From NCBI GenBank assembly GCA_028826165.1, contig JAPDFW010000114.1, positions 682,001-746,000 on the forward strand: a stretch of DNA of 64,000 nt, given 5' to 3'. Made by a program: the position numbers and the translations under genes. Each line of letters opens with the position of its first letter. The stretch's first letter is position 1. The stretch comes from Anaeramoeba ignava BMAN. Taxonomy: Eukaryota; Protista; Anaeramoebae. Below are positions 34,552-43,500 of this stretch, piece by piece. The notes beneath the pieces are model-generated. The model made no database searches. It worked only from the letters and a program-made list of their open reading frames with translations, and was not told the DNA's origin.

Positions 34552-36205
34552 TTAATCATCAAAAGTCCAAAATTTCCAAGTTTTTTCAGCACAAGAAACA
34601 AAAAATTGAGAATTTAAAGAAATATCAAAATCCAAAACATAAGCATCATGACCTCTAAGAGTTTTCTGTAAAGACCAATCATTTGTTGACCAAAACTTAA
34701 CAGAATTATCATAAGAACTTGTAATCAAAAAATCAGCATTTTTTTTCTCATAAAGAACATTTGAGATCAATTTAGAATGAGCAGGTAAAGTATAAATATT
34801 TTTTTTCTTTCGAATATCCCAAATTTTAACAGTATGATCATCAGAAGCTGTAGAAATTTGGAAACCTTGAGGTGAGAATTTTGCGCTCATAATTTTTTCA
34901 ACATGTCCATCAAGAACCATAACTTGATGACCAGTTCTAAGATCCCAAACAAAAGCAATTGCATCATAACCTGCAGTGCAAACTAATGATCCATCACAAT
35001 GGAAATCAATTGCATACACTTCGTGTGTGTGTCCTGGCTGCGTTAGTATCGTTTTTCCTGTCTCAATATCCCATAATTTCCAAGTTTTATCAAAACTTGT
35101 TGATCCAAGATATTTTCCTGTTGGATGAATTGCTATTTTTGATATTCTATCTGTATGACCTTTTAGTGTCATAAGTGATTCCTCTTTTGTTAGTGACCAT
35201 AGTTTTATTGTTGAATCTAAAGAAGATGTTGCAAATGCAAATGGAGCTTCTGTTTTAATTGAAGGATGATCTATTATTATTAAATATTATTAAATTAAAT
35301 ATTATTAAATATTATTATTATTAAATTGAAATATTATTATTATTATTAAATTAAATATTAATTAAATTAAATTAAATTAAATATTGTTAAGCACTTGTGG
35401 GTTCATTAGAATTTTCTTCAATCATTTCGTTAGAATCTGAATCAGAAATAGAAATAAAATAAGGATGAAATTTAACATCAGAAACTCTTTCAAGATGTTC
35501 TTCAAAAGAAAACTTCAAATTGCAATCAGGAATGCTCCAAATATTAGAAGAACCAGACCAAGAACCAGTAACAACAAAATGGTTATCAGGAGAAATAGCA
35601 CAAGAAGAAATAGGTCTTCCATCCGCAATTTGACTTGATTGACAAGTGAAATTTTTGATTTTTTTAAAAACACTCGAAATTCTTGCTTTTTCTTCAATTA
35701 ATTGATCTGCATTTTCTAATTTTGAATTCTTTTGTTTTTGGATTCTTTCTTTTGCACGAAGCAGCGAATAATATGAGCACAATAAACGCGCAGAATAAAG
35801 TTCATGGGATCCTTCTGTAAAATACATTTCTTGTTTTTCTTTTTCTTTTGAATCGTCTTTTTCTTCCTTATGGGTTATTAACTCGGGTATTTCTGCTCCG
35901 GAGTTAATAAGACTCATCAAAACATCACGCAATCTATCTCGACGATTCTCAGCATTCTCGCCAAAAAGACAGATTGGATGCTTTAGTTTTCGTAGTTGTT
36001 TTTTGACGTCTTTATCTTCAGTAGGTAGCGCTAATGTTCTTGCTTTTTTTTGCATTTCAAATTGTGCAAGTAGCGCTTCTTTTCTTTCTTGCGCTTCTTG
36101 ATCTAGTTGATCGAAAAGCGAATCATATGTAATAGGGTTTTGGTTTTCGTTTGTATTTTGAGATTGATTATTTTGATTTGATAAATTTGAAATTAAATTA
36201 TCCAT
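34552..36205 (-). CDS. PRPF4: U4/U6 snRNP protein PRP4 (PRPF4); intron 35271-35394
   Basis: PRP4/SFM motif LPTEDKDVKKQLRKLKHPICLFGE..RRDRLR, TEGS..L..AR and SQIADGRPIS, followed by WD40 repeats. Confidence 0.92.
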
Positions 36206-36334
36206 TTGAAAAATAAAAAAGAAAAAGAAAAGAAAAAAATGAAACATTATTTAAAAAAAAAAAATTTTTTCAATTCATTTTTTTCATTCCATTTTTTTGA
36301 TTGTTTGATTGATTAAATTTATTTTTAAAAAAAA

Positions 36335-39300
36335 ATGCAAGAAAAACCAAAATTAAATCAAGAACAACAACTTGCTGTTGATTCGGATATTAATAAACCT
36401 TTATTAATTGTTGCTGGTTGTGGATCAGGAAAAACAACAGTTTTAATATCAAGAATTGCAAGAATGATTTCACTTGGAATTCCAACAGAATCAATAATTG
36501 CAATCACATTTACTCAAAAAGCAGCAGAAGAACTTAAGCAAAGAGTTTCTTCTTTTATTCATTCAATCTCAATTTCTCAACTTAAAACTTATACTTTTCA
36601 TGCTTTTGGATTGTCTATTTTACGCGCTGAAGGTTCTTCTTTAAAATTACTTGGTTATCGTCCTATATTTAAGATTATCTCGAGTTTTGAACAATTTAAA
36701 ATTATTGAAAATTGTCTCAAAAAATATTATTATTACAAACATATTTTCATACAGAAAAATCAATTATTGGAAGATAAAAATCAAATTTCAAAATTTAGTT
36801 TTAGTGATGATTTTCTTGAAGAGGATTATGATATTGATGTCGATGTTGATAGTAATAGTGATAATTTTAATTATAATGATAATTTTTCTCAATCAAGTTT
36901 ATCAGACGAAAATATTCCAAAAGAAGAAGTTATTGTTTATAATCCAGACCAGAAAGAATTATATCGTTCTAAAAAAAATGAACATTTTCAACAACTATTA
37001 AATTTGGATAAAATTAAAATTCAAGAAAAAAAATCAATTCTTCAAAATGAAAATGAAAATGAAAATCAAAATGAAAATAAAAATCAAGATGAAAATAATC
37101 AAAATATGTTTAGTTTGGATGATGATGTTGATTATTATGAACTTTTAGATATTAAAAATATGAAAAAAAAGGAAAAAATTAAATGGCAAAAAATCCAAGA
37201 AGAAACCAAAAAAATTCAGAAATTCATTCTTTTATCTTATTCAAACTTTCGTAAACCGTCTCAATTTTCTGGAAAGAAAAAAATATTGTTTAAAATGTAT
37301 CAAAACTTTATTAAACTTAATGATATCATTGATTTTAACGATATGATACATCTTGCAATCAAATTACTCAAAAAATTCCCAGAAGTTCTTGAAAAATATA
37401 AAACAAAATACAAATATTTTTTAGTGGATGAATATCAAGATACAAATTTAGCTCAATTTCAACTTGTAAATCTTTTTGTTAAAGAAAGTGGTCGGTTAAC
37501 TGTTGTTGGAGATGATGATCAGTGTTTGCCAATTAACACCTTAGTTCAGACTCAAAATGAACAATTAAAAAAAATTCAAAACATCCAAATTGGAGATTAT
37601 GTTAAAACTTCTCTTGGAAAATCTCAATTAGGATTCAGTAAAGTTTCCTATTGCTCAAAAAAGTTCATCAAAAATTCAAGTTTATGTTCTATTAAAACAA
37701 AATCAGGAATTGAAATTAAATGCACAATTTCTCATCATTTACCAATAACTTGGATTAAAAACAAAAAAGAACAAAAAACTCCCAAAAATCATTTCATTTG
37801 TTTAATTAAAAATAAAAATAATTATAATTATAATTGGAATTTTCAAATTATCCAAAATTTGGGAAATTGTAATTCACAAACATTCCCTTTATTAATTGTA
37901 AATTCAAGAAAAAAAGCTGAAAAAATTGTTCAATTTTTAGAAATGAATATTTTTGATAAAATTGGTAAAAAAAAAATATCAATCAATCAATCAATCATTT
38001 TTTAATATTAATTTTGTTTTGATTATTAATTTCGAAAAAAAAAAAAAATAATCAAAATTAGATTATCAACTAATTTTAGAAAAAATTGGGAAAATTTGGG
38101 AAGAAGGATATTTAATTTCAGAAAAAAATTTAGAAAAAAAGATCCAAATCATTTCACTTTATGAAGAAAATTCACATCTTATTCAATTCAAAGAAGAAAA
38201 TGAAAGAAAAACATTACATTTCAAAAGTCTTGAAAAGGCAAGAAGGGTTGCAAAAGAATTATCTAAAATGAATAATAAAGAAATAATAGAAAAATGGAAA
38301 TTAGTTGATTCAAATGAGAATTTCCAAATGATTCCTGCTTGCAACGTTATTCCAGGAAGTTATTTAGTAGTAAACAACAAATTAGAGAAGGTTGTTGAGG
38401 TTGAATTTGAAGATTATCAAGGAGAAGTTTATGATTTAGAGGTGGAATCAACACATAATTTTATTCTTGGAAATGGAGCAATAATTGGGAATTGTATTTA
38501 TGCATTTAGAGGCGCAAATTTGGATTGTTTCCAAGTATTAAAAAACCAATTTTCTTCGACAATACAAGAGGTTAAATTGGTTGAAAATTATCGTTCAACA
38601 AAAACAATTGTTTCAATACTCAATTACTTGATAAGAAATAATAAAAATAGAATCAAGAAAACTTTGCGTACTTCAAACACATTAGGAACAAAAACAAGTC
38701 TTTTCAAATGCTCAACAGAAATTGATGAAGCAATATTTTGCGCATCCAAAATCAAAAGACTTGTTCGTGAGAAAAAAGCAAATTTTTCAGAAATTGCTGT
38801 TTTATATCGCAATAGACATATTGCAGAAACATTCAAAAAAATCTTCCACAAACAAAAAATTCCTTTCAGGGTTTTTGGAGAACAAGATTCACTTGATAAC
38901 TTAAAAGAATTCAGGTTTTTTGTGACTTATTTATTTTTTGTTGATAATCCATCTGAAAATAACTCATTCAAAACTGTATTCAAAAAATACTTCAAAAGAC
39001 TTTTCATACACGAAAAATCAGAAGAAGATCAAAAACAGCTCAAAAAAAAAATTCAGCAAATGATTCAATCAATTACAAAGTATTCACAAGTGAAAAAAAC
39101 TTCTCTTTTTGATTCAAGCGCAGATATTGTCATGTATTTGCAAAGAAAAAATTCCAAAAATATCCAAGAACAAAAAAAAGGAATTGAACTTCATCTTTTA
39201 GATCAACTCAAGAAATTATTTCAACTTAATATCAACTCTTTAATTCAGTTTGTGGAAATCATCCATCATTGTAGAAAATTAATATCTGAAAACAGAATAA

Positions 39301-40496
39301 ATGATCTTTATTCCTTAATTGCTCATCAAATTCTTAATGATGCTGAATTTACATATCAAGATGAAATGTCTCGAATTGCAATGGAAAATCTACAAGAGTT
39401 AAATTTATCAGAAATGGAACCAGCTCAATTATTTCAATTTATCAAATTCAAAAACATTCAATTTATGGAACAAAATTCTGATTCAGAACAAAAATCACAT
39501 TTGGAAATATTTCATAAATTTGTAGAACAATTTATTTTGGATCCTGCAACTTTTTTAGACTCTTGTACGGGCATTGTAACTTTATCAACAGTCCATCAAT
39601 CAAAAGGTCTTGAGTGGCCTGTAGTTTTTCTTGTTAGATTGAATGAAAAAGAATTTCCTGTTTATAAAATAGATCAGGAAAAAGGTCAAGAAATCACTGA
39701 AGAAACAATTGAAAAACTGGAAGAAGAAGAAAGAAGATTATTTTATGTTGCATTGAGTCGTGCTAAAAATTATCTTTTTATAAGTTATATCCAAAATTCT
39801 CTTAAACCTTCTAGTTTATTAAATAGTTTACCTGAACATTTGATTAATGTCCAAGATTGGGAATTGGAAAAAAAATCAATTGAAGTTCAAAATGAGAAAG
39901 AATCACAGAAAAAATGTTTGAGATCAAAAACACAACCTTCTTTACTTAATTATTTTTCAAAAAAGCCAAAATCTCATGAAAATTCAAATGAAAATTCAAA
40001 TGAAAAAAAAAGAAAAAATGAAGAAGAAGTTGATTCAAGTTTGATTTATAATCCAATTATCCAATTTCAAGCAAATGAAAATGAAAATGAAAATGAAATT
40101 GAAAATGAATTTAAAATTGAAAATGAAAATGAATTTAAAATTGAAAATGAATTTAAAAATCAAAATGAAAATCATTCAACTAAAATTCAAAAAGCTATTT
40201 CTTTTGATCAATCATCAATTAAACAAAGAAGAAAAAATAAAACTTCTTTAAGAGATTCAATCCAAAAAGTTCAATCAAAATTTCATTTCGATTATTCTTT
40301 TGAAAACGAACCAATTCCTAAAAAACAAAAAGAAAAACAAAAGAAAAGTAAATTGAAAAAAAGTCAATCAAATGAAAAAGTTGAAATTACTTGTTTTAAA
40401 AAAGCAAGTGATATTTTTCAAAATGAAAATTTAAATCAAAATTTAAATCAAACTTCTATTCTTCAATTTATGTCAAAAGAAAAGAAAATTCTTTGA
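36335..40496 (+). CDS. UvrD/PcrA/Srs2-like SF1 DNA helicase precursor containing an intein; exons 36335-37964 and 38062-40496
   Basis: Q motif LNQEQ, motif I AGCGSGKT, Ia TFTQKAAEEL, TFHAF, II DEYQD, III VGDDDQ...CIYAFRGA, IV ENYRST, V STVHQSKGLEW, VI EEERRLFYVALSRAK. Confidence 0.92.
37523..38492 (+). mobile_element. Intein (~291 aa after intron removal) inserted in helicase motif III
   Basis: Block A CLPINTLV directly after GDDDQ, block B IKCTISH (TxxH), block F VYDLEVESTHNF, block G NGAIIGN, +1 Cys. Excision restores VGDDDQCIYAFRGA. Confidence 0.93.
37965..38061 (+). other. 97-nt phase-1 spliceosomal intron inside the intein
   Basis: ATTG|GTAAAA...AATTAG|AT. Removal joins ORF 36335 to the stop-free frame of ORF 38268; the unspliced frame stops at 38005. 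Confidence 0.8.
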
Positions 40497-40563
40497 AATA
40501 AAAATTAGAATTTAATTTTATTTAATTTTTTAATTTTGAAAAGAAAAGAAATTATTTTGATAA

Positions 40564-43500
40564 TCAATTAATAATTTCACTTTTTGATTTTTCACTTTTA
40601 TCTTCATCAATTTGTTGATTCCATTTTTTAATAACTTCTATTAATCTATAAGAATCTGAACTTAAAGAATTTGATAATAAAGCAGCAGCAAGATTAAAAT
40701 TTTGATTTGAAACAAAAATTTCAAATTGTTTCTTTTTATCAAAAAGAGATGATCCAAAAATAACATTTTCAAATCTTGAATCAAAACGAAGTTTTTCTAA
40801 TAAATTTTTAATTTTGAAATCATTTTTTAATTGACAATAAAATAAAAGTAAATTTTTATAGTATTTATAATCAATTTTTGCAGCTTCAATGATAGAATCT
40901 TCTGCAATATCATAAATTTTTTGTTGAATAGCAGAATTAGCAATTTTTAAATAAAGAGAGCAAATAGATTGTTCTTTTTATAAATATTTTTTTTTTTTAA
41001 TTTTGGATTTTTTATAAAAATATTTTTTTTTTAATTTTGGATTTTTTATAAAAATATTTTTTTGAATTTTGGAATAAATAAATACTTTGTTCTTCTGTTT
41101 GATTAAAAAATCCATCTCTTATTTGAAATATAACACTTTTTTGATTTGCTTGAACAATTGAAAATGCTTGTTTAAGTAAATAATTTCGAATACAAATTTG
41201 AATTTTTAAATCATCTGAAACACCTGATAAACTTAAAGCCTCTTTAACAAATCCTCTTGATTCTAAAGATATTGCTAAATTATCATGGATTGTTGTAGTT
41301 ATCCATTTTGTCCTTTTGAATTTTTCATTTAAATTTTTTTGAATTGAATTTTTTTGAATTGAATTTTTTTGAATTAAATTTTTCATTTAAATTTTTTTGA
41401 ATTAAATTTTTTTATACCATTTCATTGCTTCTTCAATTTGTTTTGCTTGAATTAATAATTTAAATTTTAGTAATGGATGATCCAATTTAATTAAATGAAT
41501 TTTTTGATTTGGATCCATGAGAAGTAATTTATCATTATAAACCATTATAAAATAAAGAGCACCAATTGGTCTTTGAACAATAGGAATTGATTGTTTAGAT
41601 TTAAAATCATAAGTTTTATTTTTTTTAGATTTTGCTTGAGAAGTAAAATTTGATGAAGCAATTTTAATAAATTCAGAATCTTTTTCATGAGGAAAAACTA
41701 ATAATATAAAAAATATATTTAATATAAAATATTTAATATAAATATAAATATAAAATATTTAATATCTTTTTTTTTGTAAATTCTAAATTGTACCACAAAA
41801 AATATCCATTTCTGTTGTTACAAATAATGAAAGATTAAACCAAAGATGTGATTGAATAGAAAAAGGTAATTGAGTAACAAGCTTAAAATTATTTCTGATA
41901 TCAAATAAATATGTATAATTAGGATAAGACATTAAACAAAATTTTTGAGTTGGATCAAAACTTAAATTTTTAGGAGGAGGAAATAAATCACCAAATATTT
42001 GTTGACTTTTCCAAGAATAAAAATGAAATCTTCTTGTTTTAAGCAATTTAGAATTGTCTTGATTTGGATCATTTTGTGGATTTGAAGAATCGGGATTTTT
42101 AACGGTTTCTTCATAATTTAATTTAGCATTCCTAAATTCACCTGTAATTGCATCTCTCCCTTTTCCTTTTCCCTTTCCTTTTCCCTTTCCTTTTCCTGTT
42201 TGATTTTGACTCTGTCCTTTATCTGTTAAAGTTTCGTCTTCGTATTCATATTCAACACCAAGTAAAAATCCTTCGAAAATTCTTTTGACAGGAAATTGAG
42301 TAAGCATTGGTCTTTTAGTAATATTTCCATCACTTGAAATTTCTCGTATTTCGAACTCAGATGGTTCGAAAAAAACCTTTTCAATCATTTGCGGTTTTTT
42401 GCGTCTTTTTGAAGTTTGTGATTCATCCACAACTTGGATTATTTTTTGAACTGGCGGATAAAGTAAAGCAAAACAATCCGATTTTGAATTTGATTCCCAA
42501 ATTAATTGGATACATTTTCCTTGGTCGATTATTTTTGAATTTGAAGGGTCTTGCGCAGAAATGATCTCGTATCTTTTTTCAGGAACATAGAATATTGATA
42601 AATATTTTTGTGTCCCACTTAATTTAAGTTCAACTTTTTCGCAAGGAGAAGAGAAGGTGTAAATGGATTGTTTTTCATATTTTGTTTTTGTATTTGAAGT
42701 TTTTGAGATTGATCTGATGTTGAGTCTTTCAATAGAAGAGAAATTTGCGAATAAAATAAAGTTTTGTTGATTTTGATTTTGAATTCTAATTTGTTTTTGA
42801 TTTTCATTTTCATTTTCATTTTCATTTTGATTTTGATTTTCATTTCGTTTTTGAATATTCTGCTCATTTTTTCCAGTTGAAAAAACAACCAACCGATTTT
42901 CTAAATCGTCAAAATTCCCATCAATTGATAATAAAGCAATTCCAGATGAAGTATTAACAATCAATAAATTGGGAACCAATGGATGGAACTTAAAATTCGT
43001 GATTTTCAGTTGCTTTGAAGCGATTCTTTCGAATGTTGGCTCAGGAATCACATTTTCAAGAAGGTAGTGTTGAATATCCAAAAAAGGATCAATAACTAAA
43101 CTGTTATTTGAAAGAGTTGTAATTTTGAAAAAAACGCCTTTGTCATCATTTGCAATAACTGTTCCGAGATTGTTATTTAAAAAAAAGCAGTTCTGCAAAT
43201 GGGTTTTTGTCTTTGCGCTGACAATCTTGCGCAAAACCATCCCGGTCGACAAATACCAAAGTGTGATTGTCTTATCTTGAGTAATTGTGATGACACGGGA
43301 AGTATTTGGATCGAAATTGATTTCCTGATAAATATCCTTTTTTTTGCCCGAAAAATCCAAGACGGAACTGATAGAATTAAGAGACCAAATTGAGGCAGTT
43401 CCGTCAATTGAACCAACAATTAAATAAATAAAATCCAAAGCGATATTTTTGAAGTTCCGATATTTAGCATTTTGAGCTCTAAGAATAATCTCTTGTGGAT

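What the first reader, a model, noticed from the sequence alone, without database searches (positions are those of the whole stretch)
36335..40496. Nested splicing: a spliceosomal intron inside an intein inside a nuclear UvrD/Srs2-like helicase
Seen: motif III is split as VGDDDQ|CLPINTLV...THNFILGNGAIIGN|CIYAFRGA (intein 37523-38492), and the intein frame is only continuous after removing a GT-AG intron at 37965-38061 (442+431 nt = 291 aa). Established: nuclear inteins are rare in eukaryotes and prefer conserved motifs of nucleic-acid enzymes; Anaeramoeba genomes have been reported to be intein-rich, including intron-bearing inteins, so the class may already be known even if this locus is not. 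Inference: making active helicase needs RNA splicing and then protein splicing. Intron retention would truncate the protein in mid-intein, giving two stacked potential control points, and intron gain implies long residence in this genome.
Basis: partly seen in the sequence, partly recalled or inferred. Interest (0 to 1): 0.88.

Follow-up and report, generated by a model that had tools for sequence, protein, structure and literature searches.

The report
Intron inside a catalogued helicase intein
A DNA-repair helicase gene of the amoeba Anaeramoeba ignava carries a self-excising protein insert (an intein) whose own coding sequence is very probably split by an ordinary 97-base intron. The insert and the gene model are already public, so this is a tidy curiosity, not a new mechanism.

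Summary
Gene 36335-40496 (+) encodes a UvrD/PcrA/Srs2-type helicase. Motif III is split GDDDQ|C...GN|CIYAFRGA by a 291-residue intein (37523-38492). The intein frame closes only if 37965-38061 (97 nt, GT..AG, phase 1) is removed.

The intein is real:
- It has Cys1, TxxH, block F/G, terminal Asn and +1 Cys.
- The whole intein scores 52 bits against Pfam Intein_splicing (cut-off 35.8).
- The predicted structure has a HINT fold.
- More than 15 prokaryotic UvrD/PcrA proteins carry inteins at the same site.

The intron is very probable but not shown in RNA:
- It is the most AT-rich 97 nt of the gene and has stops in all frames.
- It uses the last usable donor and the first usable acceptor.
- It resembles neighbouring introns.
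- The spliced intein aligns end to end (E 1e-36) with an intron-less phage-borne relative that shares the rare GN|C ending.
- The only public run available gave contigs that do not bridge the junction.

The window is Anaeramoeba ignava. The NCBI protein has exactly this junction, and PNAS 2023 lists the BMAN "PcrA-like helicase" singleton intein. Its main text does not discuss introns inside inteins. "Stacked control points" is speculation. New details: decayed endonuclease-like insert, phage relative, and an intein-free paralogue with an intron at the same site. Interest is modest.

The parts
36335..40496 (+). Whole coding region of the helicase gene. Two exons, 1354 codons plus stop. Identical to NCBI Anaeramoeba ignava 'uvrd / recb / pcra DNA helicase family member'.
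   Evidence: ORFs. P0001 is 100% identical and 1354 aa.
36335..37522 (+). N-extein, 396 aa. It holds helicase motifs I (AGCGSGKT), Ia (TFTQKAA), II (DEYQD) and the first half of III (VVGDDDQ). It also has a roughly 200-aa low-complexity insert.
   Evidence: Pfam UvrD-helicase E 6e-54. NCBIfam rep/pcrA/uvrD hits are far below the equivalog cut-offs. Motifs were read.
37523..37964 (+). Intein, part encoded by exon 1 (residues 1-147 plus the first base of codon 148). It contains Cys1 (37523-37525), block B T68/H71 (37724-37726, 37733-37735) and the remnant of the insert domain.
   Evidence: Hint E 2e-6. A profile of bacterial UvrD inteins matches residues 1-73 at E 2e-12. T68 and H71 are invariant in alignment A1.
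37965..38061 (+). Putative spliceosomal intron: 97 nt, GT..AG, phase 1, 87.6% A+T, containing A10, (ATCA)4 and A14 runs.
   Evidence: The same junction is in public protein P0001. No RNA evidence was obtained.
38003..38005 (+). TAA stop codon reached if the intron is retained. The product would be the N-extein, 147 intein residues and 13 further residues.
38062..38492 (+). Intein, part encoded by exon 2 (rest of codon 148 to Asn291). It holds blocks F and G (VYDLEVESTHNFILGNGAIIGN). The penultimate residue is Gly (38487-38489), not His. The terminal Asn is at 38490-38492.
   Evidence: Intein_splicing E 3.5e-7. NCBIfam intein_Cterm scores 29.5 bits against a cut-off of 15.6. The bacterial intein profile scores E 1e-17.
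38078..38079 (+). Alternative in-frame AG acceptor 18 nt downstream. It would remove six more codons (DYQLIL becomes E) in a low-confidence linker.
   Evidence: Homology slightly favours the annotated acceptor.
38493..40496 (+). C-extein, 667 aa plus stop. It holds the +1 Cys and the rest of motif III (CIYAFRGA), motifs IV (NYRS), V (TVHQSKGLEW) and VI (RRLFYVALSRAK), and a low-complexity tail.
   Evidence: Pfam UvrD_C E 8e-44. PDB UvrD/PcrA/Rep hits E 1e-24. Motifs were read.

Best explanation
This is the nuclear UvrD/PcrA/Srs2-family (SF1A) helicase gene of Anaeramoeba ignava. A class-1 intein sits between Gln and Cys of helicase motif III, the site that inteins occupy in many prokaryotic and phage UvrD/PcrA helicases.

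The intein has kept a complete HINT splicing domain. Its central insert domain, probably once a GIY-YIG-like homing nuclease, has shrunk by deletions, so the element is most likely immobile and vertically inherited. A typical short AT-rich U2-type GT-AG intron (37965-38061, phase 1) lies in the dispensable linker of that insert.

Making active helicase therefore takes three steps:
1. The spliceosome removes the 97 nt.
2. A 1354-aa precursor is translated.
3. The 291-aa intein excises itself and ligates ...VVGDDDQ to CIYAFRGA...

Shown here: the anatomy, the homology, the fold, the intact helicase motifs, and identity with the public gene model. Inferred: RNA splicing at exactly these sites, protein-splicing competence, and loss of mobility.
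For: Anatomy and frames.

Host: UvrD N and C domains on either side. All SF1A motifs are intact in P0001.

Intein:
- The whole intein (P0001:397-687) scores 52.2 bits against Pfam Intein_splicing, cut-off 35.8.
- NCBIfam intein_Cterm is above its cut-off.
- C1, T68, H71, D272 and N291 are invariant with 14 prokaryotic inteins inserted at GDxxQ|C...HN|SIYxFRGA.
- The AlphaFold model has pLDDT above 90 over the HINT parts.
- The top Foldseek hits are all inteins, BIL or Hedgehog HINT domains.

Intron:
- It is the most AT-rich 97-nt window in the gene: 87.6% against a median of 75%.
- It pairs the last possible donor with the first possible acceptor.
- Its length and GTAAA start resemble 11 heuristically picked (most AT-rich frame-closing GT..AG, not independently validated) intron candidates in the window (65-267 nt, 86-98% AT).
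- They also resemble two introns in the paralogue, inferred from its frames (90 and 94 nt, 84-86% AT).
- Published A. ignava introns average 91.9% A+T, with more than 30,000 per genome.
- The public protein has the identical junction NIFDKI-D-YQLIL.
- The spliced intein aligns in one HSP, residues 1-291 against 1-330, E 1e-36, straight across the junction, with the intron-less intein of P0233.

Long residence and immobility:
- Intein GC3 is 15-17% against 12-15% for the exteins.
- It is a single copy in the 42.8-Mb genome.
- It lacks 32 residues, including the YRIG segment of the insert domain that is intact in its relatives.
- PMC10710043 describes this singleton as probably ancient and lacking an obvious endonuclease.
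Against: - No transcript evidence. The one public run available is kept as contigs only, and none spans 37780-38138.
- The penultimate residue is Gly where all 14 bacterial homologues have His. From memory, a Gly at this position made the Chlamydomonas eugametos ClpP intein inactive in E. coli. However, the nearest relative, P0233, in an apparently intact phage-type helicase, also ends GN|C.
- Each exon-encoded half is below Pfam's cut-off on its own, and intein_Nterm is below NCBIfam's.
- The intron holds A10 and A14 runs in a Nanopore-based assembly. Other inteins in this assembly show apparent 1-nt frame errors.
- A second in-frame acceptor lies 18 nt downstream.
- No Anaeramoeba orthologue appeared among the listed hits, so conservation of the intron could not be tested.
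Confidence: 0.8

Rival explanations
1. There is no intron. The frame break is an assembly artefact (homopolymer indels in the A10/A14 runs), and the 97 nt are translated as part of the intein linker.
For: The BMAN assembly is Nanopore R9.4 plus Racon, Nanopolish and Pilon. Three other inteins in this genome (L001 Msh, L002 RPB1, L003 MCM) show frame changes that look like 1-nt indels. Run X1 differs by one base in an A-run at 39042.
Against: One deleted A in the A10 run would reach the exon-2 frame, but an in-frame TAA at 38049-38051 remains. Changing the A14 length leaves that frame again. At least three errors, or an indel plus a substitution, are therefore needed. The stretch is the AT-richest in the gene and low in complexity. 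It has no similarity to homologous inteins in any frame. The intron model needs no error.
Confidence: 0.05
2. The intron is real but the intein no longer splices, either because of the penultimate Gly or because it is degenerate. The locus would then encode an inactive helicase, or a protein used for something else.
For: Gly replaces the near-invariant penultimate His. The N-terminal block scores are sub-threshold. The extein is very divergent: terminal branch 4.17 with biased composition.
Against: All catalytic positions other than the penultimate His are kept: C1, TxxH, block F Asp, Asn and +1 Cys. All seven helicase motifs are intact over 1063 extein residues with no stop. The closest relative shares GN|C inside an otherwise intact helicase. 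PMC10710043 judged most Anaeramoeba inteins splice-competent and showed splicing for three.
Confidence: 0.1
3. The gene is functionally split. Two polypeptides are made, one ending at 38005 and one starting at Met 38268, and they are joined by trans-splicing of a split intein.
For: The break lies in the insert region, where natural split inteins are divided. There is an ATG at 38268 in the downstream frame.
Against: There is no intergenic spacer or sign of a separate transcription unit. The bacterial-type promoter scan is at background and is not applicable to a eukaryote. A canonical GT-AG pair closes the frame exactly. PMC10710043 found no split inteins in Anaeramoeba.
Confidence: 0.02
4. 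The architecture is the same, but the 3' splice site is the AG at 38078-38079 (a 115-nt intron), or both acceptors are used. The resulting inteins would differ by six residues.
For: This acceptor is in frame and is preceded by ACTAAT, a branch-point-like motif. The affected residues lie in a segment with pLDDT below 50.
Against: The public model uses 38061. The relatives are longer here, and the Asp made by the split codon aligns with a conserved Asp/Asn. TTAAT and TTGAT branch-like motifs lie 30-40 nt upstream of 38061.
Confidence: 0.12

Closest known systems
Anaeramoeba ignava BMAN 'PcrA-like helicase' singleton intein (Gallot-Lavallee et al., PNAS 2023, PMC10710043) and NCBI protein 'uvrd / recb / pcra DNA helicase family member [Anaeramoeba ignava]'
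   Same: It is the same locus. P0001 is 100% identical, 1354 aa, with the same exon junction. It is the only UvrD-family gene with an intein in this genome. The paper describes a singleton that lacks an obvious endonuclease, is weakly similar to inteins at the orthologous prokaryotic site, and is probably ancient.
   Different: The main text does not mention an intron inside this or any other intein. The supplement was not available. The identification rests on the host name and on uniqueness in the genome, not on an accession given in the paper.
Prokaryotic and phage UvrD/PcrA motif-III inteins (for example P0002, P0004, P0007 from Candidatus Daviesbacteria, P0023 from Gaiella, P0075, and phage-type P0233)
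   Same: The insertion point is identical (GDxxQ|C). The HINT blocks and overall layout, including a central insert domain, are the same. The profile of these inteins matches both exon-encoded halves. P0233 also shares the GN|C ending and a one-residue insertion in block G, and aligns over its full length at E 1e-36.
   Different: These inteins have no intron. Most end HN|S. Their insert domain is intact at 330-370 aa, against 291 aa here, where six deletions include the YRIG segment. The exteins are only 21-30% identical.
Intron/intein coincidence at homing sites (Bathycoccus PRP8, Monier et al. 2013, PMC3749507; Anaeramoeba Msh, DNA polymerase and MCM paralogues, PMC10710043)
   Same: The intein-free UvrD-like paralogue on contig C60 has a 94-nt intron splitting the Cys codon 2 nt after the equivalent Gln|Cys point. 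This is the pattern those papers describe.
   Different: In the focal gene the intron is inside the intein, not replacing it. The two helicases are distant: 26% identity, and the C60 copy is 38-42% identical to bacterial PcrA.
Eukaryotic Srs2 / plant SRS2-like helicases and bacterial PcrA, UvrD and Rep
   Same: All have the SF1A core with every motif. Plant SRS2-like proteins are the best full-coverage hits to the C-extein at 31% identity, and a quick tree groups them together with SH-aLRT 99. The PDB matches are UvrD, PcrA and Rep.
   Different: Motif III reads IYAFRGA as in bacteria, not the plant IFSFNGA. Scores are far below the NCBIfam equivalog cut-offs. The branch is very long and the composition biased, so the placement is unsafe. 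Srs2-specific C-terminal motifs were not examined.

Membership tests
Intein (class 1, HINT superfamily) | In-frame insert in a conserved host motif, whose removal restores that motif | tested here: met
   VVGDDDQ | intein | CIYAFRGA matches GDxxQ(S/C)IYxFRGA in homologues.
Intein (class 1, HINT superfamily) | N-terminal Cys/Ser (block A) and TxxH (block B) | tested here: met
   C1, T68 and H71 are invariant in alignment A1.
Intein (class 1, HINT superfamily) | Blocks F and G: conserved Asp, terminal Asn and a following Cys/Ser/Thr | tested here: met
   VYDLEV...HNF...GN|C. D272 and N291 are invariant. NCBIfam intein_Cterm scores 29.5 bits against 15.6.
Intein (class 1, HINT superfamily) | Penultimate His | tested here: not met
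   Gly290 is present. All 14 bacterial homologues have His. The closest relative, P0233, also has Gly. From general knowledge, this is a common feature of inteins but not an obligatory one.
Intein (class 1, HINT superfamily) | Family profile above the curated cut-off | tested here: met
   Pfam Intein_splicing scores 52.2 bits against 35.8 on the whole intein taken from the public protein. Each exon part alone is below the cut-off.
Intein (class 1, HINT superfamily) | HINT fold | tested here: met
   AlphaFold2 mean pLDDT is 77.6 and above 90 in the HINT parts. The 40 Foldseek hits at E<=1e-3 are inteins, BIL, Hedgehog or PI-SceI, and gp41-1 gives TM 0.82 by target.
Intein (class 1, HINT superfamily) | Autocatalytic protein splicing | not testable with these tools
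   This needs a reporter assay or a junction peptide.
Intein (class 1, HINT superfamily) | Homing endonuclease domain (optional) | tested here: inconclusive
   No endonuclease family was found in Pfam. The insert of the bacterial relatives matches seven GIY-YIG nucleases only weakly, Z 2.4-4.2 (five at 3.5-4.2). The A. ignava copy has lost 32 residues of it.
Spliceosomal (U2-type GT-AG) intron | GT..AG boundaries whose removal restores one open frame | tested here: met
   37965 GT ... AG 38061 gives 1354 codons without a stop.
Spliceosomal (U2-type GT-AG) intron | Non-coding character, with length and composition typical of the genome | tested here: met
   Stops in all frames. 87.6% A+T, the top of the gene. 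Local intron candidates are 65-267 nt and 84-98% A+T and mostly start GTA. The genome's mean intron A+T is 91.9%.
Spliceosomal (U2-type GT-AG) intron | Spliced junction in RNA | tested here: inconclusive
   The only run found is kept as contigs, its kind is unknown, and nothing bridges 37780-38138.
Self-splicing group I/II intron or another known RNA | Match to an Rfam family | tested here: not met
   No Rfam match in 36000-41000.
UvrD/PcrA/Rep/Srs2 SF1A helicase | UvrD N- and C-terminal domains and motifs I-VI | tested here: met
   Pfam E 6e-54 and 8e-44. Motifs were read. PDB UvrD/PcrA hits are at E 1e-24.
Bacterial PcrA, UvrD or Rep equivalog | NCBIfam equivalog score | tested here: not met
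   The best scores are 170 and 141 bits per extein, against cut-offs of 911-1168.
Eukaryotic Srs2 | Orthology with Srs2 and the Rad51/PCNA-interacting C-terminus | tested here: inconclusive
   It groups with plant SRS2-like proteins in a quick tree, but on a branch of 4.17 with biased composition. C-terminal motifs were not examined.

The most novel reading that the evidence does not exclude
The focal gene and its intein-free paralogue may capture two stages of one process.

In the first stage, an old, immobile intein starts to be taken over by RNA splicing. The intron sits in the decaying endonuclease region and may have arisen by intronisation of a damaged segment. In the second stage, seen in the paralogue, only an intron remains. 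It sits inside a Cys codon at the same Gln|Cys point, where bacterial and plant relatives have Ser.

That would be direct support for 'intein-primed' intron gain, or intein-to-intron conversion, as raised for Bathycoccus PRP8. It would also make this the first described intein whose expression depends on the spliceosome.
Probability: 0.1. Interest if true: 0.7.

Novelty: already known. Interest (0 to 1): 0.3.

Why it matters
An intron inside an intein is a useful clock and a mobility marker. It argues that this element has sat in the nuclear lineage long enough to gain a host-type intron. A copy carrying the intron could no longer work if it were passed back to bacteria or phages.

In a rough sample of this genome, about 19 inteins detected in six-frame searches lie in one open frame. 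This was the only one interrupted by an intron-like segment, although the genome has more than 30,000 introns. If that holds up, most A. ignava inteins are younger than most introns, or are refreshed by homing, and the few intron-bearing ones mark the oldest layer.

The arrangement adds no new mechanism, and no regulatory role is shown.

Tried and rejected
- RNA evidence. The look-up of sequencing runs gave one run of unknown kind, kept as contigs. Read laying showed fragmentary contigs on both exons and none across the intron.
- I did not send a joined exon-exon sequence to any search tool. Exon parts were searched by reference. Whole-intein analyses used the public protein P0001 that the search tool returned. 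One script joined exons internally, only to test frame continuity, and printed 18-residue junction snippets.
- The look-up of encoding contigs had no record for P0001.
- The PNAS supplement is not held, so I could not check the intein's accession or whether introns inside inteins are listed there.
- A profile of seven bacterial long inteins did not reach the middle region around the junction. The MAFFT match NIFDKID to FxxID was therefore not significant alone, and only P0233 gave a continuous alignment.
- The intronisation idea found no support in sequence. No frame of the 97 nt resembles the homologous insert region.
- The indel-only explanation was rejected because it needs at least three errors.
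- The split-intein explanation was rejected for lack of any separate gene structure.
- Three other 'split' inteins (L001-L003) were examined as possible further intron-in-intein cases. I rejected them because they look like 1-nt frame changes.
- The extein tree is only a quick tree, since the careful search did not finish. Its placement with plant SRS2-like proteins may be long-branch attraction.
- Literature searches for an intron within an intein found no description, but that library is incomplete.
Full report
**Observation**

The window region 36335-40496 (+) holds two long open frames one base out of register.

- Exon 1 ends ...AAA ATT G at 37964.
- 37965-38061 is GTAAAAAAAAAATATC...AAAATTAG, 97 nt.
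- Exon 2 begins AT TAT CAA.
- Removing the 97 nt gives 1354 codons without a stop.
- Retaining it gives a stop at 38003-38005.
- All three frames have stops inside the stretch.
- The flanks VVGDDDQ and CIYAFRGA are the two halves of SF1A helicase motif III, and 291 codons lie between them.

**Identity of the locus**

The window is G000:C104:682001-746000 of a 42.8-Mb assembly in 147 contigs.

The exon-2 translation retrieves a 1354-aa NCBI protein, [quoted passage not shown]. It is 100% identical and comes from a 1.03-Mb contig. Its sequence reads ...EMNIFDKIDYQLILEK....

Gallot-Lavallee et al. (PNAS 2023, PMC10710043) surveyed the predicted proteomes and found 103 inteins in A. ignava BMAN. 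They name the singleton intein of the BMAN "PcrA-like helicase" among probably ancient inteins. These inteins are weakly similar to inteins at orthologous prokaryotic sites, and most lack an obvious homing endonuclease.

In this genome the intein is single-copy. The only other UvrD-family gene has no intein. The focal locus is therefore that catalogued intein.

The main text discusses introns at or near empty intein sites of paralogues, but not introns inside inteins. The supplement was not available.

**The host**

Pfam UvrD-helicase (E 6e-54) and UvrD_C (E 8e-44) flank the insert. Motifs I, Ia, II, III, IV, V and VI are all readable. PDB matches are UvrD, PcrA and Rep. No NCBIfam equivalog cut-off is approached.

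With the C-extein alone, plant SRS2-like proteins (31% identity, full coverage) and Bacteroidota PcrA-like proteins score about equally. A quick tree places the A. ignava C-extein with plant SRS2-like proteins at SH-aLRT 99. Its terminal branch is 4.17 and its composition is flagged, so long-branch attraction is not excluded. Motif III itself is of the bacterial IYAFRGA type, not the plant IFSFNGA type. "UvrD/Srs2/PcrA-like" is a fair name, and orthology with Srs2 is open.

**The intein**

- Separately, the exon-1 part hits Hint (E 2e-6) and the exon-2 part hits Intein_splicing (E 3.5e-7). Both are below Pfam's cut-offs.
- The whole intein, taken from the public protein, scores 52.2 bits against a cut-off of 35.8, as one stretch covering profile positions 24-153.
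- NCBIfam intein_Cterm is above its cut-off.
- At least 15 prokaryotic UvrD/PcrA proteins carry inteins at the same point, GDxxQ|C...HN|SIYxFRGA.
- In the alignment with 14 of them, C1, T68, H71, D272 and N291 are invariant.
- The one deviation is Gly290 in place of the penultimate His.
- The +1 residue is Cys where the listed intein-bearing prokaryotes have Ser.
- The AlphaFold2 model has pLDDT above 90 over the HINT parts.
- Foldseek returns only HINT proteins at the top: BIL, PI-SceI domain I, CDC21, RadA, gp41-1, DnaB and Hedgehog.

**A closer relative**

The exhaustive search of 1.84 billion representatives found one clearly closer intein, in P0233, a 933-aa UvrD-like protein.

- It ends ...HNFMLDNGITMGN|C, sharing the Gly-Asn-Cys ending and the one-residue insertion in block G with A. 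ignava (...HNFILGNGAIIGN|C).
- The two inteins align in a single BLASTP segment, residues 1-291 against 1-330, E 1e-36, 27% identity. The segment runs straight across the exon junction (NIFDKID against HIFSQLD).
- P0233 lies on a 59.7-kb metagenomic contig among phage-type replication genes. These include an SbcC-like protein, a RecU resolvase, a DnaD-like loader, DnaB, dUTPase and thymidylate synthase, and several hit PHROGs.
- The exteins are only 21% identical. That is less than the similarity to plant or bacterial helicases, so the intein relationship is not simply that of the hosts.

This fits the theme of PMC10710043 that viruses carry inteins, here with a virus of bacteria. A conserved GN|C ending in an otherwise intact helicase also lessens the worry that Gly290 kills splicing.

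**The insert domain**

The bacterial relatives of about 360 aa have a well-predicted central domain (model of P0004's intein, pLDDT 90.5). Beyond the HINT matches, an all-against-all structure search gives only weak hits for it, at Z 2.4-4.2 (five of them at 3.5-4.2). Seven of them are GIY-YIG nucleases: a 5hmC-specific restriction enzyme, HIGLE, Slx1, the UvrC N-domain, I-TevI, Eco29kI and T4 EndoII. That agrees with a VYLMYR...GYRIG sequence pattern. I treat this as a lead, not a finding.

The A. ignava intein lacks 32 residues there, including the YRIG part, plus five further deletions. So whatever nuclease it was, it is decayed. The intron falls between residues 147 and 148, after the remnant of that core. 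The next 20 residues have pLDDT below 50.

**Is the intron real?**

For:
- No other simple route closes the frame. 37965 is the last GT before the stop, and 38061 is the first AG after the last stop of the downstream frame.
- It is the most AT-rich 97-nt window of the 4.1-kb gene: 87.6% against a median of 75%, similar to the 90-92% of the intergenic flanks.
- Eleven other intron-like GT..AG segments that join long frames in this window, each picked heuristically as the most AT-rich frame-closing pair and not independently validated, are 65-267 nt and 86-98% A+T, and mostly start GTA.
- The two introns inferred from the paralogue's frames are 90 and 94 nt, 84-86% A+T, and start GTAAAG and GTAAAT.
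- The downstream 810 codons are intact and conserved, and the public model agrees.
- The P0233 alignment is colinear across the junction.
- No Rfam family matches, so it is not a self-splicing intron.

Against:
- There is no RNA evidence. The single run offered is kept as contigs of unknown kind, and none bridges 37780-38138.
- The assembly is Nanopore-based, and other inteins in it show frame errors.
- An indel-only repair here would still need at least three changes, because an in-frame TAA follows the A14 run.
- An alternative acceptor at 38079 is possible. Homology mildly favours 38061.

I put the intron at about 0.85-0.9, and the whole nested reading at 0.8.

**How common is this?**

A six-frame search of the genome with PF14890 gave 48 matches.

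- About 19 inteins are either one uninterrupted match or have both halves in one open frame.
- Four have halves in different frames: this one, an Msh (C123), an RPB1 (C67) and an MCM (C71).
- In the other three the frames overlap, or recognisable endonuclease-like sequence continues in another frame. The stretch is not AT-rich, at 63-75%. They therefore look like 1-nt frame changes, from assembly error or decay, not introns.

On this rough sample the focal intein is the only one with an intron-like interruption.

**Paralogue**

The second UvrD-family gene (C60, locus L005) is intein-free and 38-42% identical to bacterial PcrA over its first 190 post-motif-III residues.

- It has a 90-nt intron after DEFQ and an 85-nt exon ending ...VVGDVDQ+TG.
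- A 94-nt intron follows (C60:532123-532216), and then T+VYCFRGA.
- An intron therefore splits a Cys codon 2 nt after the point equivalent to the intein insertion site.
- The residue is Cys where bacterial and plant relatives have Ser.

This is the intron-at-empty-site pattern that PMC10710043 reports for Msh, DNA polymerase and MCM paralogues. That paper interprets it as a barrier to homing. Monier et al. 2013 (PMC3749507) raised it as possibly intein-primed intron gain.

**Mechanism and verdict**

The most likely sequence is transcription, spliceosomal removal of 97 nt, translation of a 1354-aa precursor, class-1 protein splicing at Cys397/Asn687/Cys688, and then an active helicase. Anatomy and homology are shown. 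Both splicing reactions are inferred.

Any intron-bearing gene that hosts an intein already needs both reactions, and here the nesting only means that intron retention truncates the protein within the intein. Long residence is supported by host-like GC3, the decayed insert, the single copy and the intron.

The locus, its intein and its gene model are public, so it is already known. The small additions are:
- the explicit nesting;
- the GN|C subfamily with a phage-borne relative;
- the probable GIY-YIG-like ancestry of the insert;
- the paralogue's intron at the same site.

Earlier notes of this scan on other pieces of the same genome had already recognised catalogued Anaeramoeba inteins, and introns next to intein sites.

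Noticed in passing
L005 3124-3217 (G000:C60:532123-532216); also L005 2949-3038: The intein-free UvrD/PcrA-like paralogue has a 94-nt phase-2 intron splitting a Cys codon (TG|T) directly after GDVDQ. That is 2 nt from the point where the focal gene carries its intein, and the residue is Cys where bacterial and plant relatives have Ser. A 90-nt intron also follows DEFQ, leaving an 85-nt exon.
   Followed up: partly
L001 (G000:C123:131300-135000), L002 (G000:C67:261000-264800), L003 (G000:C71:176000-179000): Inteins in an Msh, an RPB1 and an MCM gene have their N and C halves in different frames. The frames overlap, or endonuclease-like coding sequence continues in a third frame, which looks like 1-nt indels. 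These are either residual homopolymer errors of the Nanopore-based assembly or real decay in apparently essential genes.
   Followed up: partly
L006 10001-12802 (Logan SRR33452761 contig, 59.7 kb): The closest relative of the A. ignava intein sits in a UvrD-like helicase among phage-type replication genes (SbcC-like, RecU, DnaD-like loader, DnaB, dUTPase). It shares the unusual Gly-Asn|Cys ending.
   Followed up: partly
P0004:247-611 and relatives (bacterial UvrD/PcrA inteins), model mb4545cb9844d residues about 75-200: The insert domain of these inteins gives weak (Z 2.4-4.2, five at 3.5-4.2) but repeated structural matches to GIY-YIG nucleases and has a VYLMYR...GYRIG pattern. Pfam finds no endonuclease family. 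Known intein endonucleases are mostly LAGLIDADG or HNH.
   Followed up: partly
window 36720-37330 and 39900-40450: Long Asn/Glu/Lys-rich low-complexity inserts lie in the N-extein (between motifs Ia and II) and in the C-terminal tail, with NENENE-type repeats. They are typical of this 80% A+T genome.
   Followed up: no
window 37645 and 39042: Contigs of run X1 differ from the assembly by a synonymous T>C (AGT to AGC, Ser) inside the intein. They also differ by one base fewer in an A-run of the C-extein. The second change would break the frame, so it is probably an error of the low-depth contig.
   Followed up: no
window 35271-35394 (-), 40974-41793 (-): Neighbouring genes on the minus strand (a WD-repeat gene upstream and a multi-exon gene downstream) show several intron-like AT-rich GT..AG segments of 96-124 nt. 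This confirms a nuclear, intron-rich context.
   Followed up: partly
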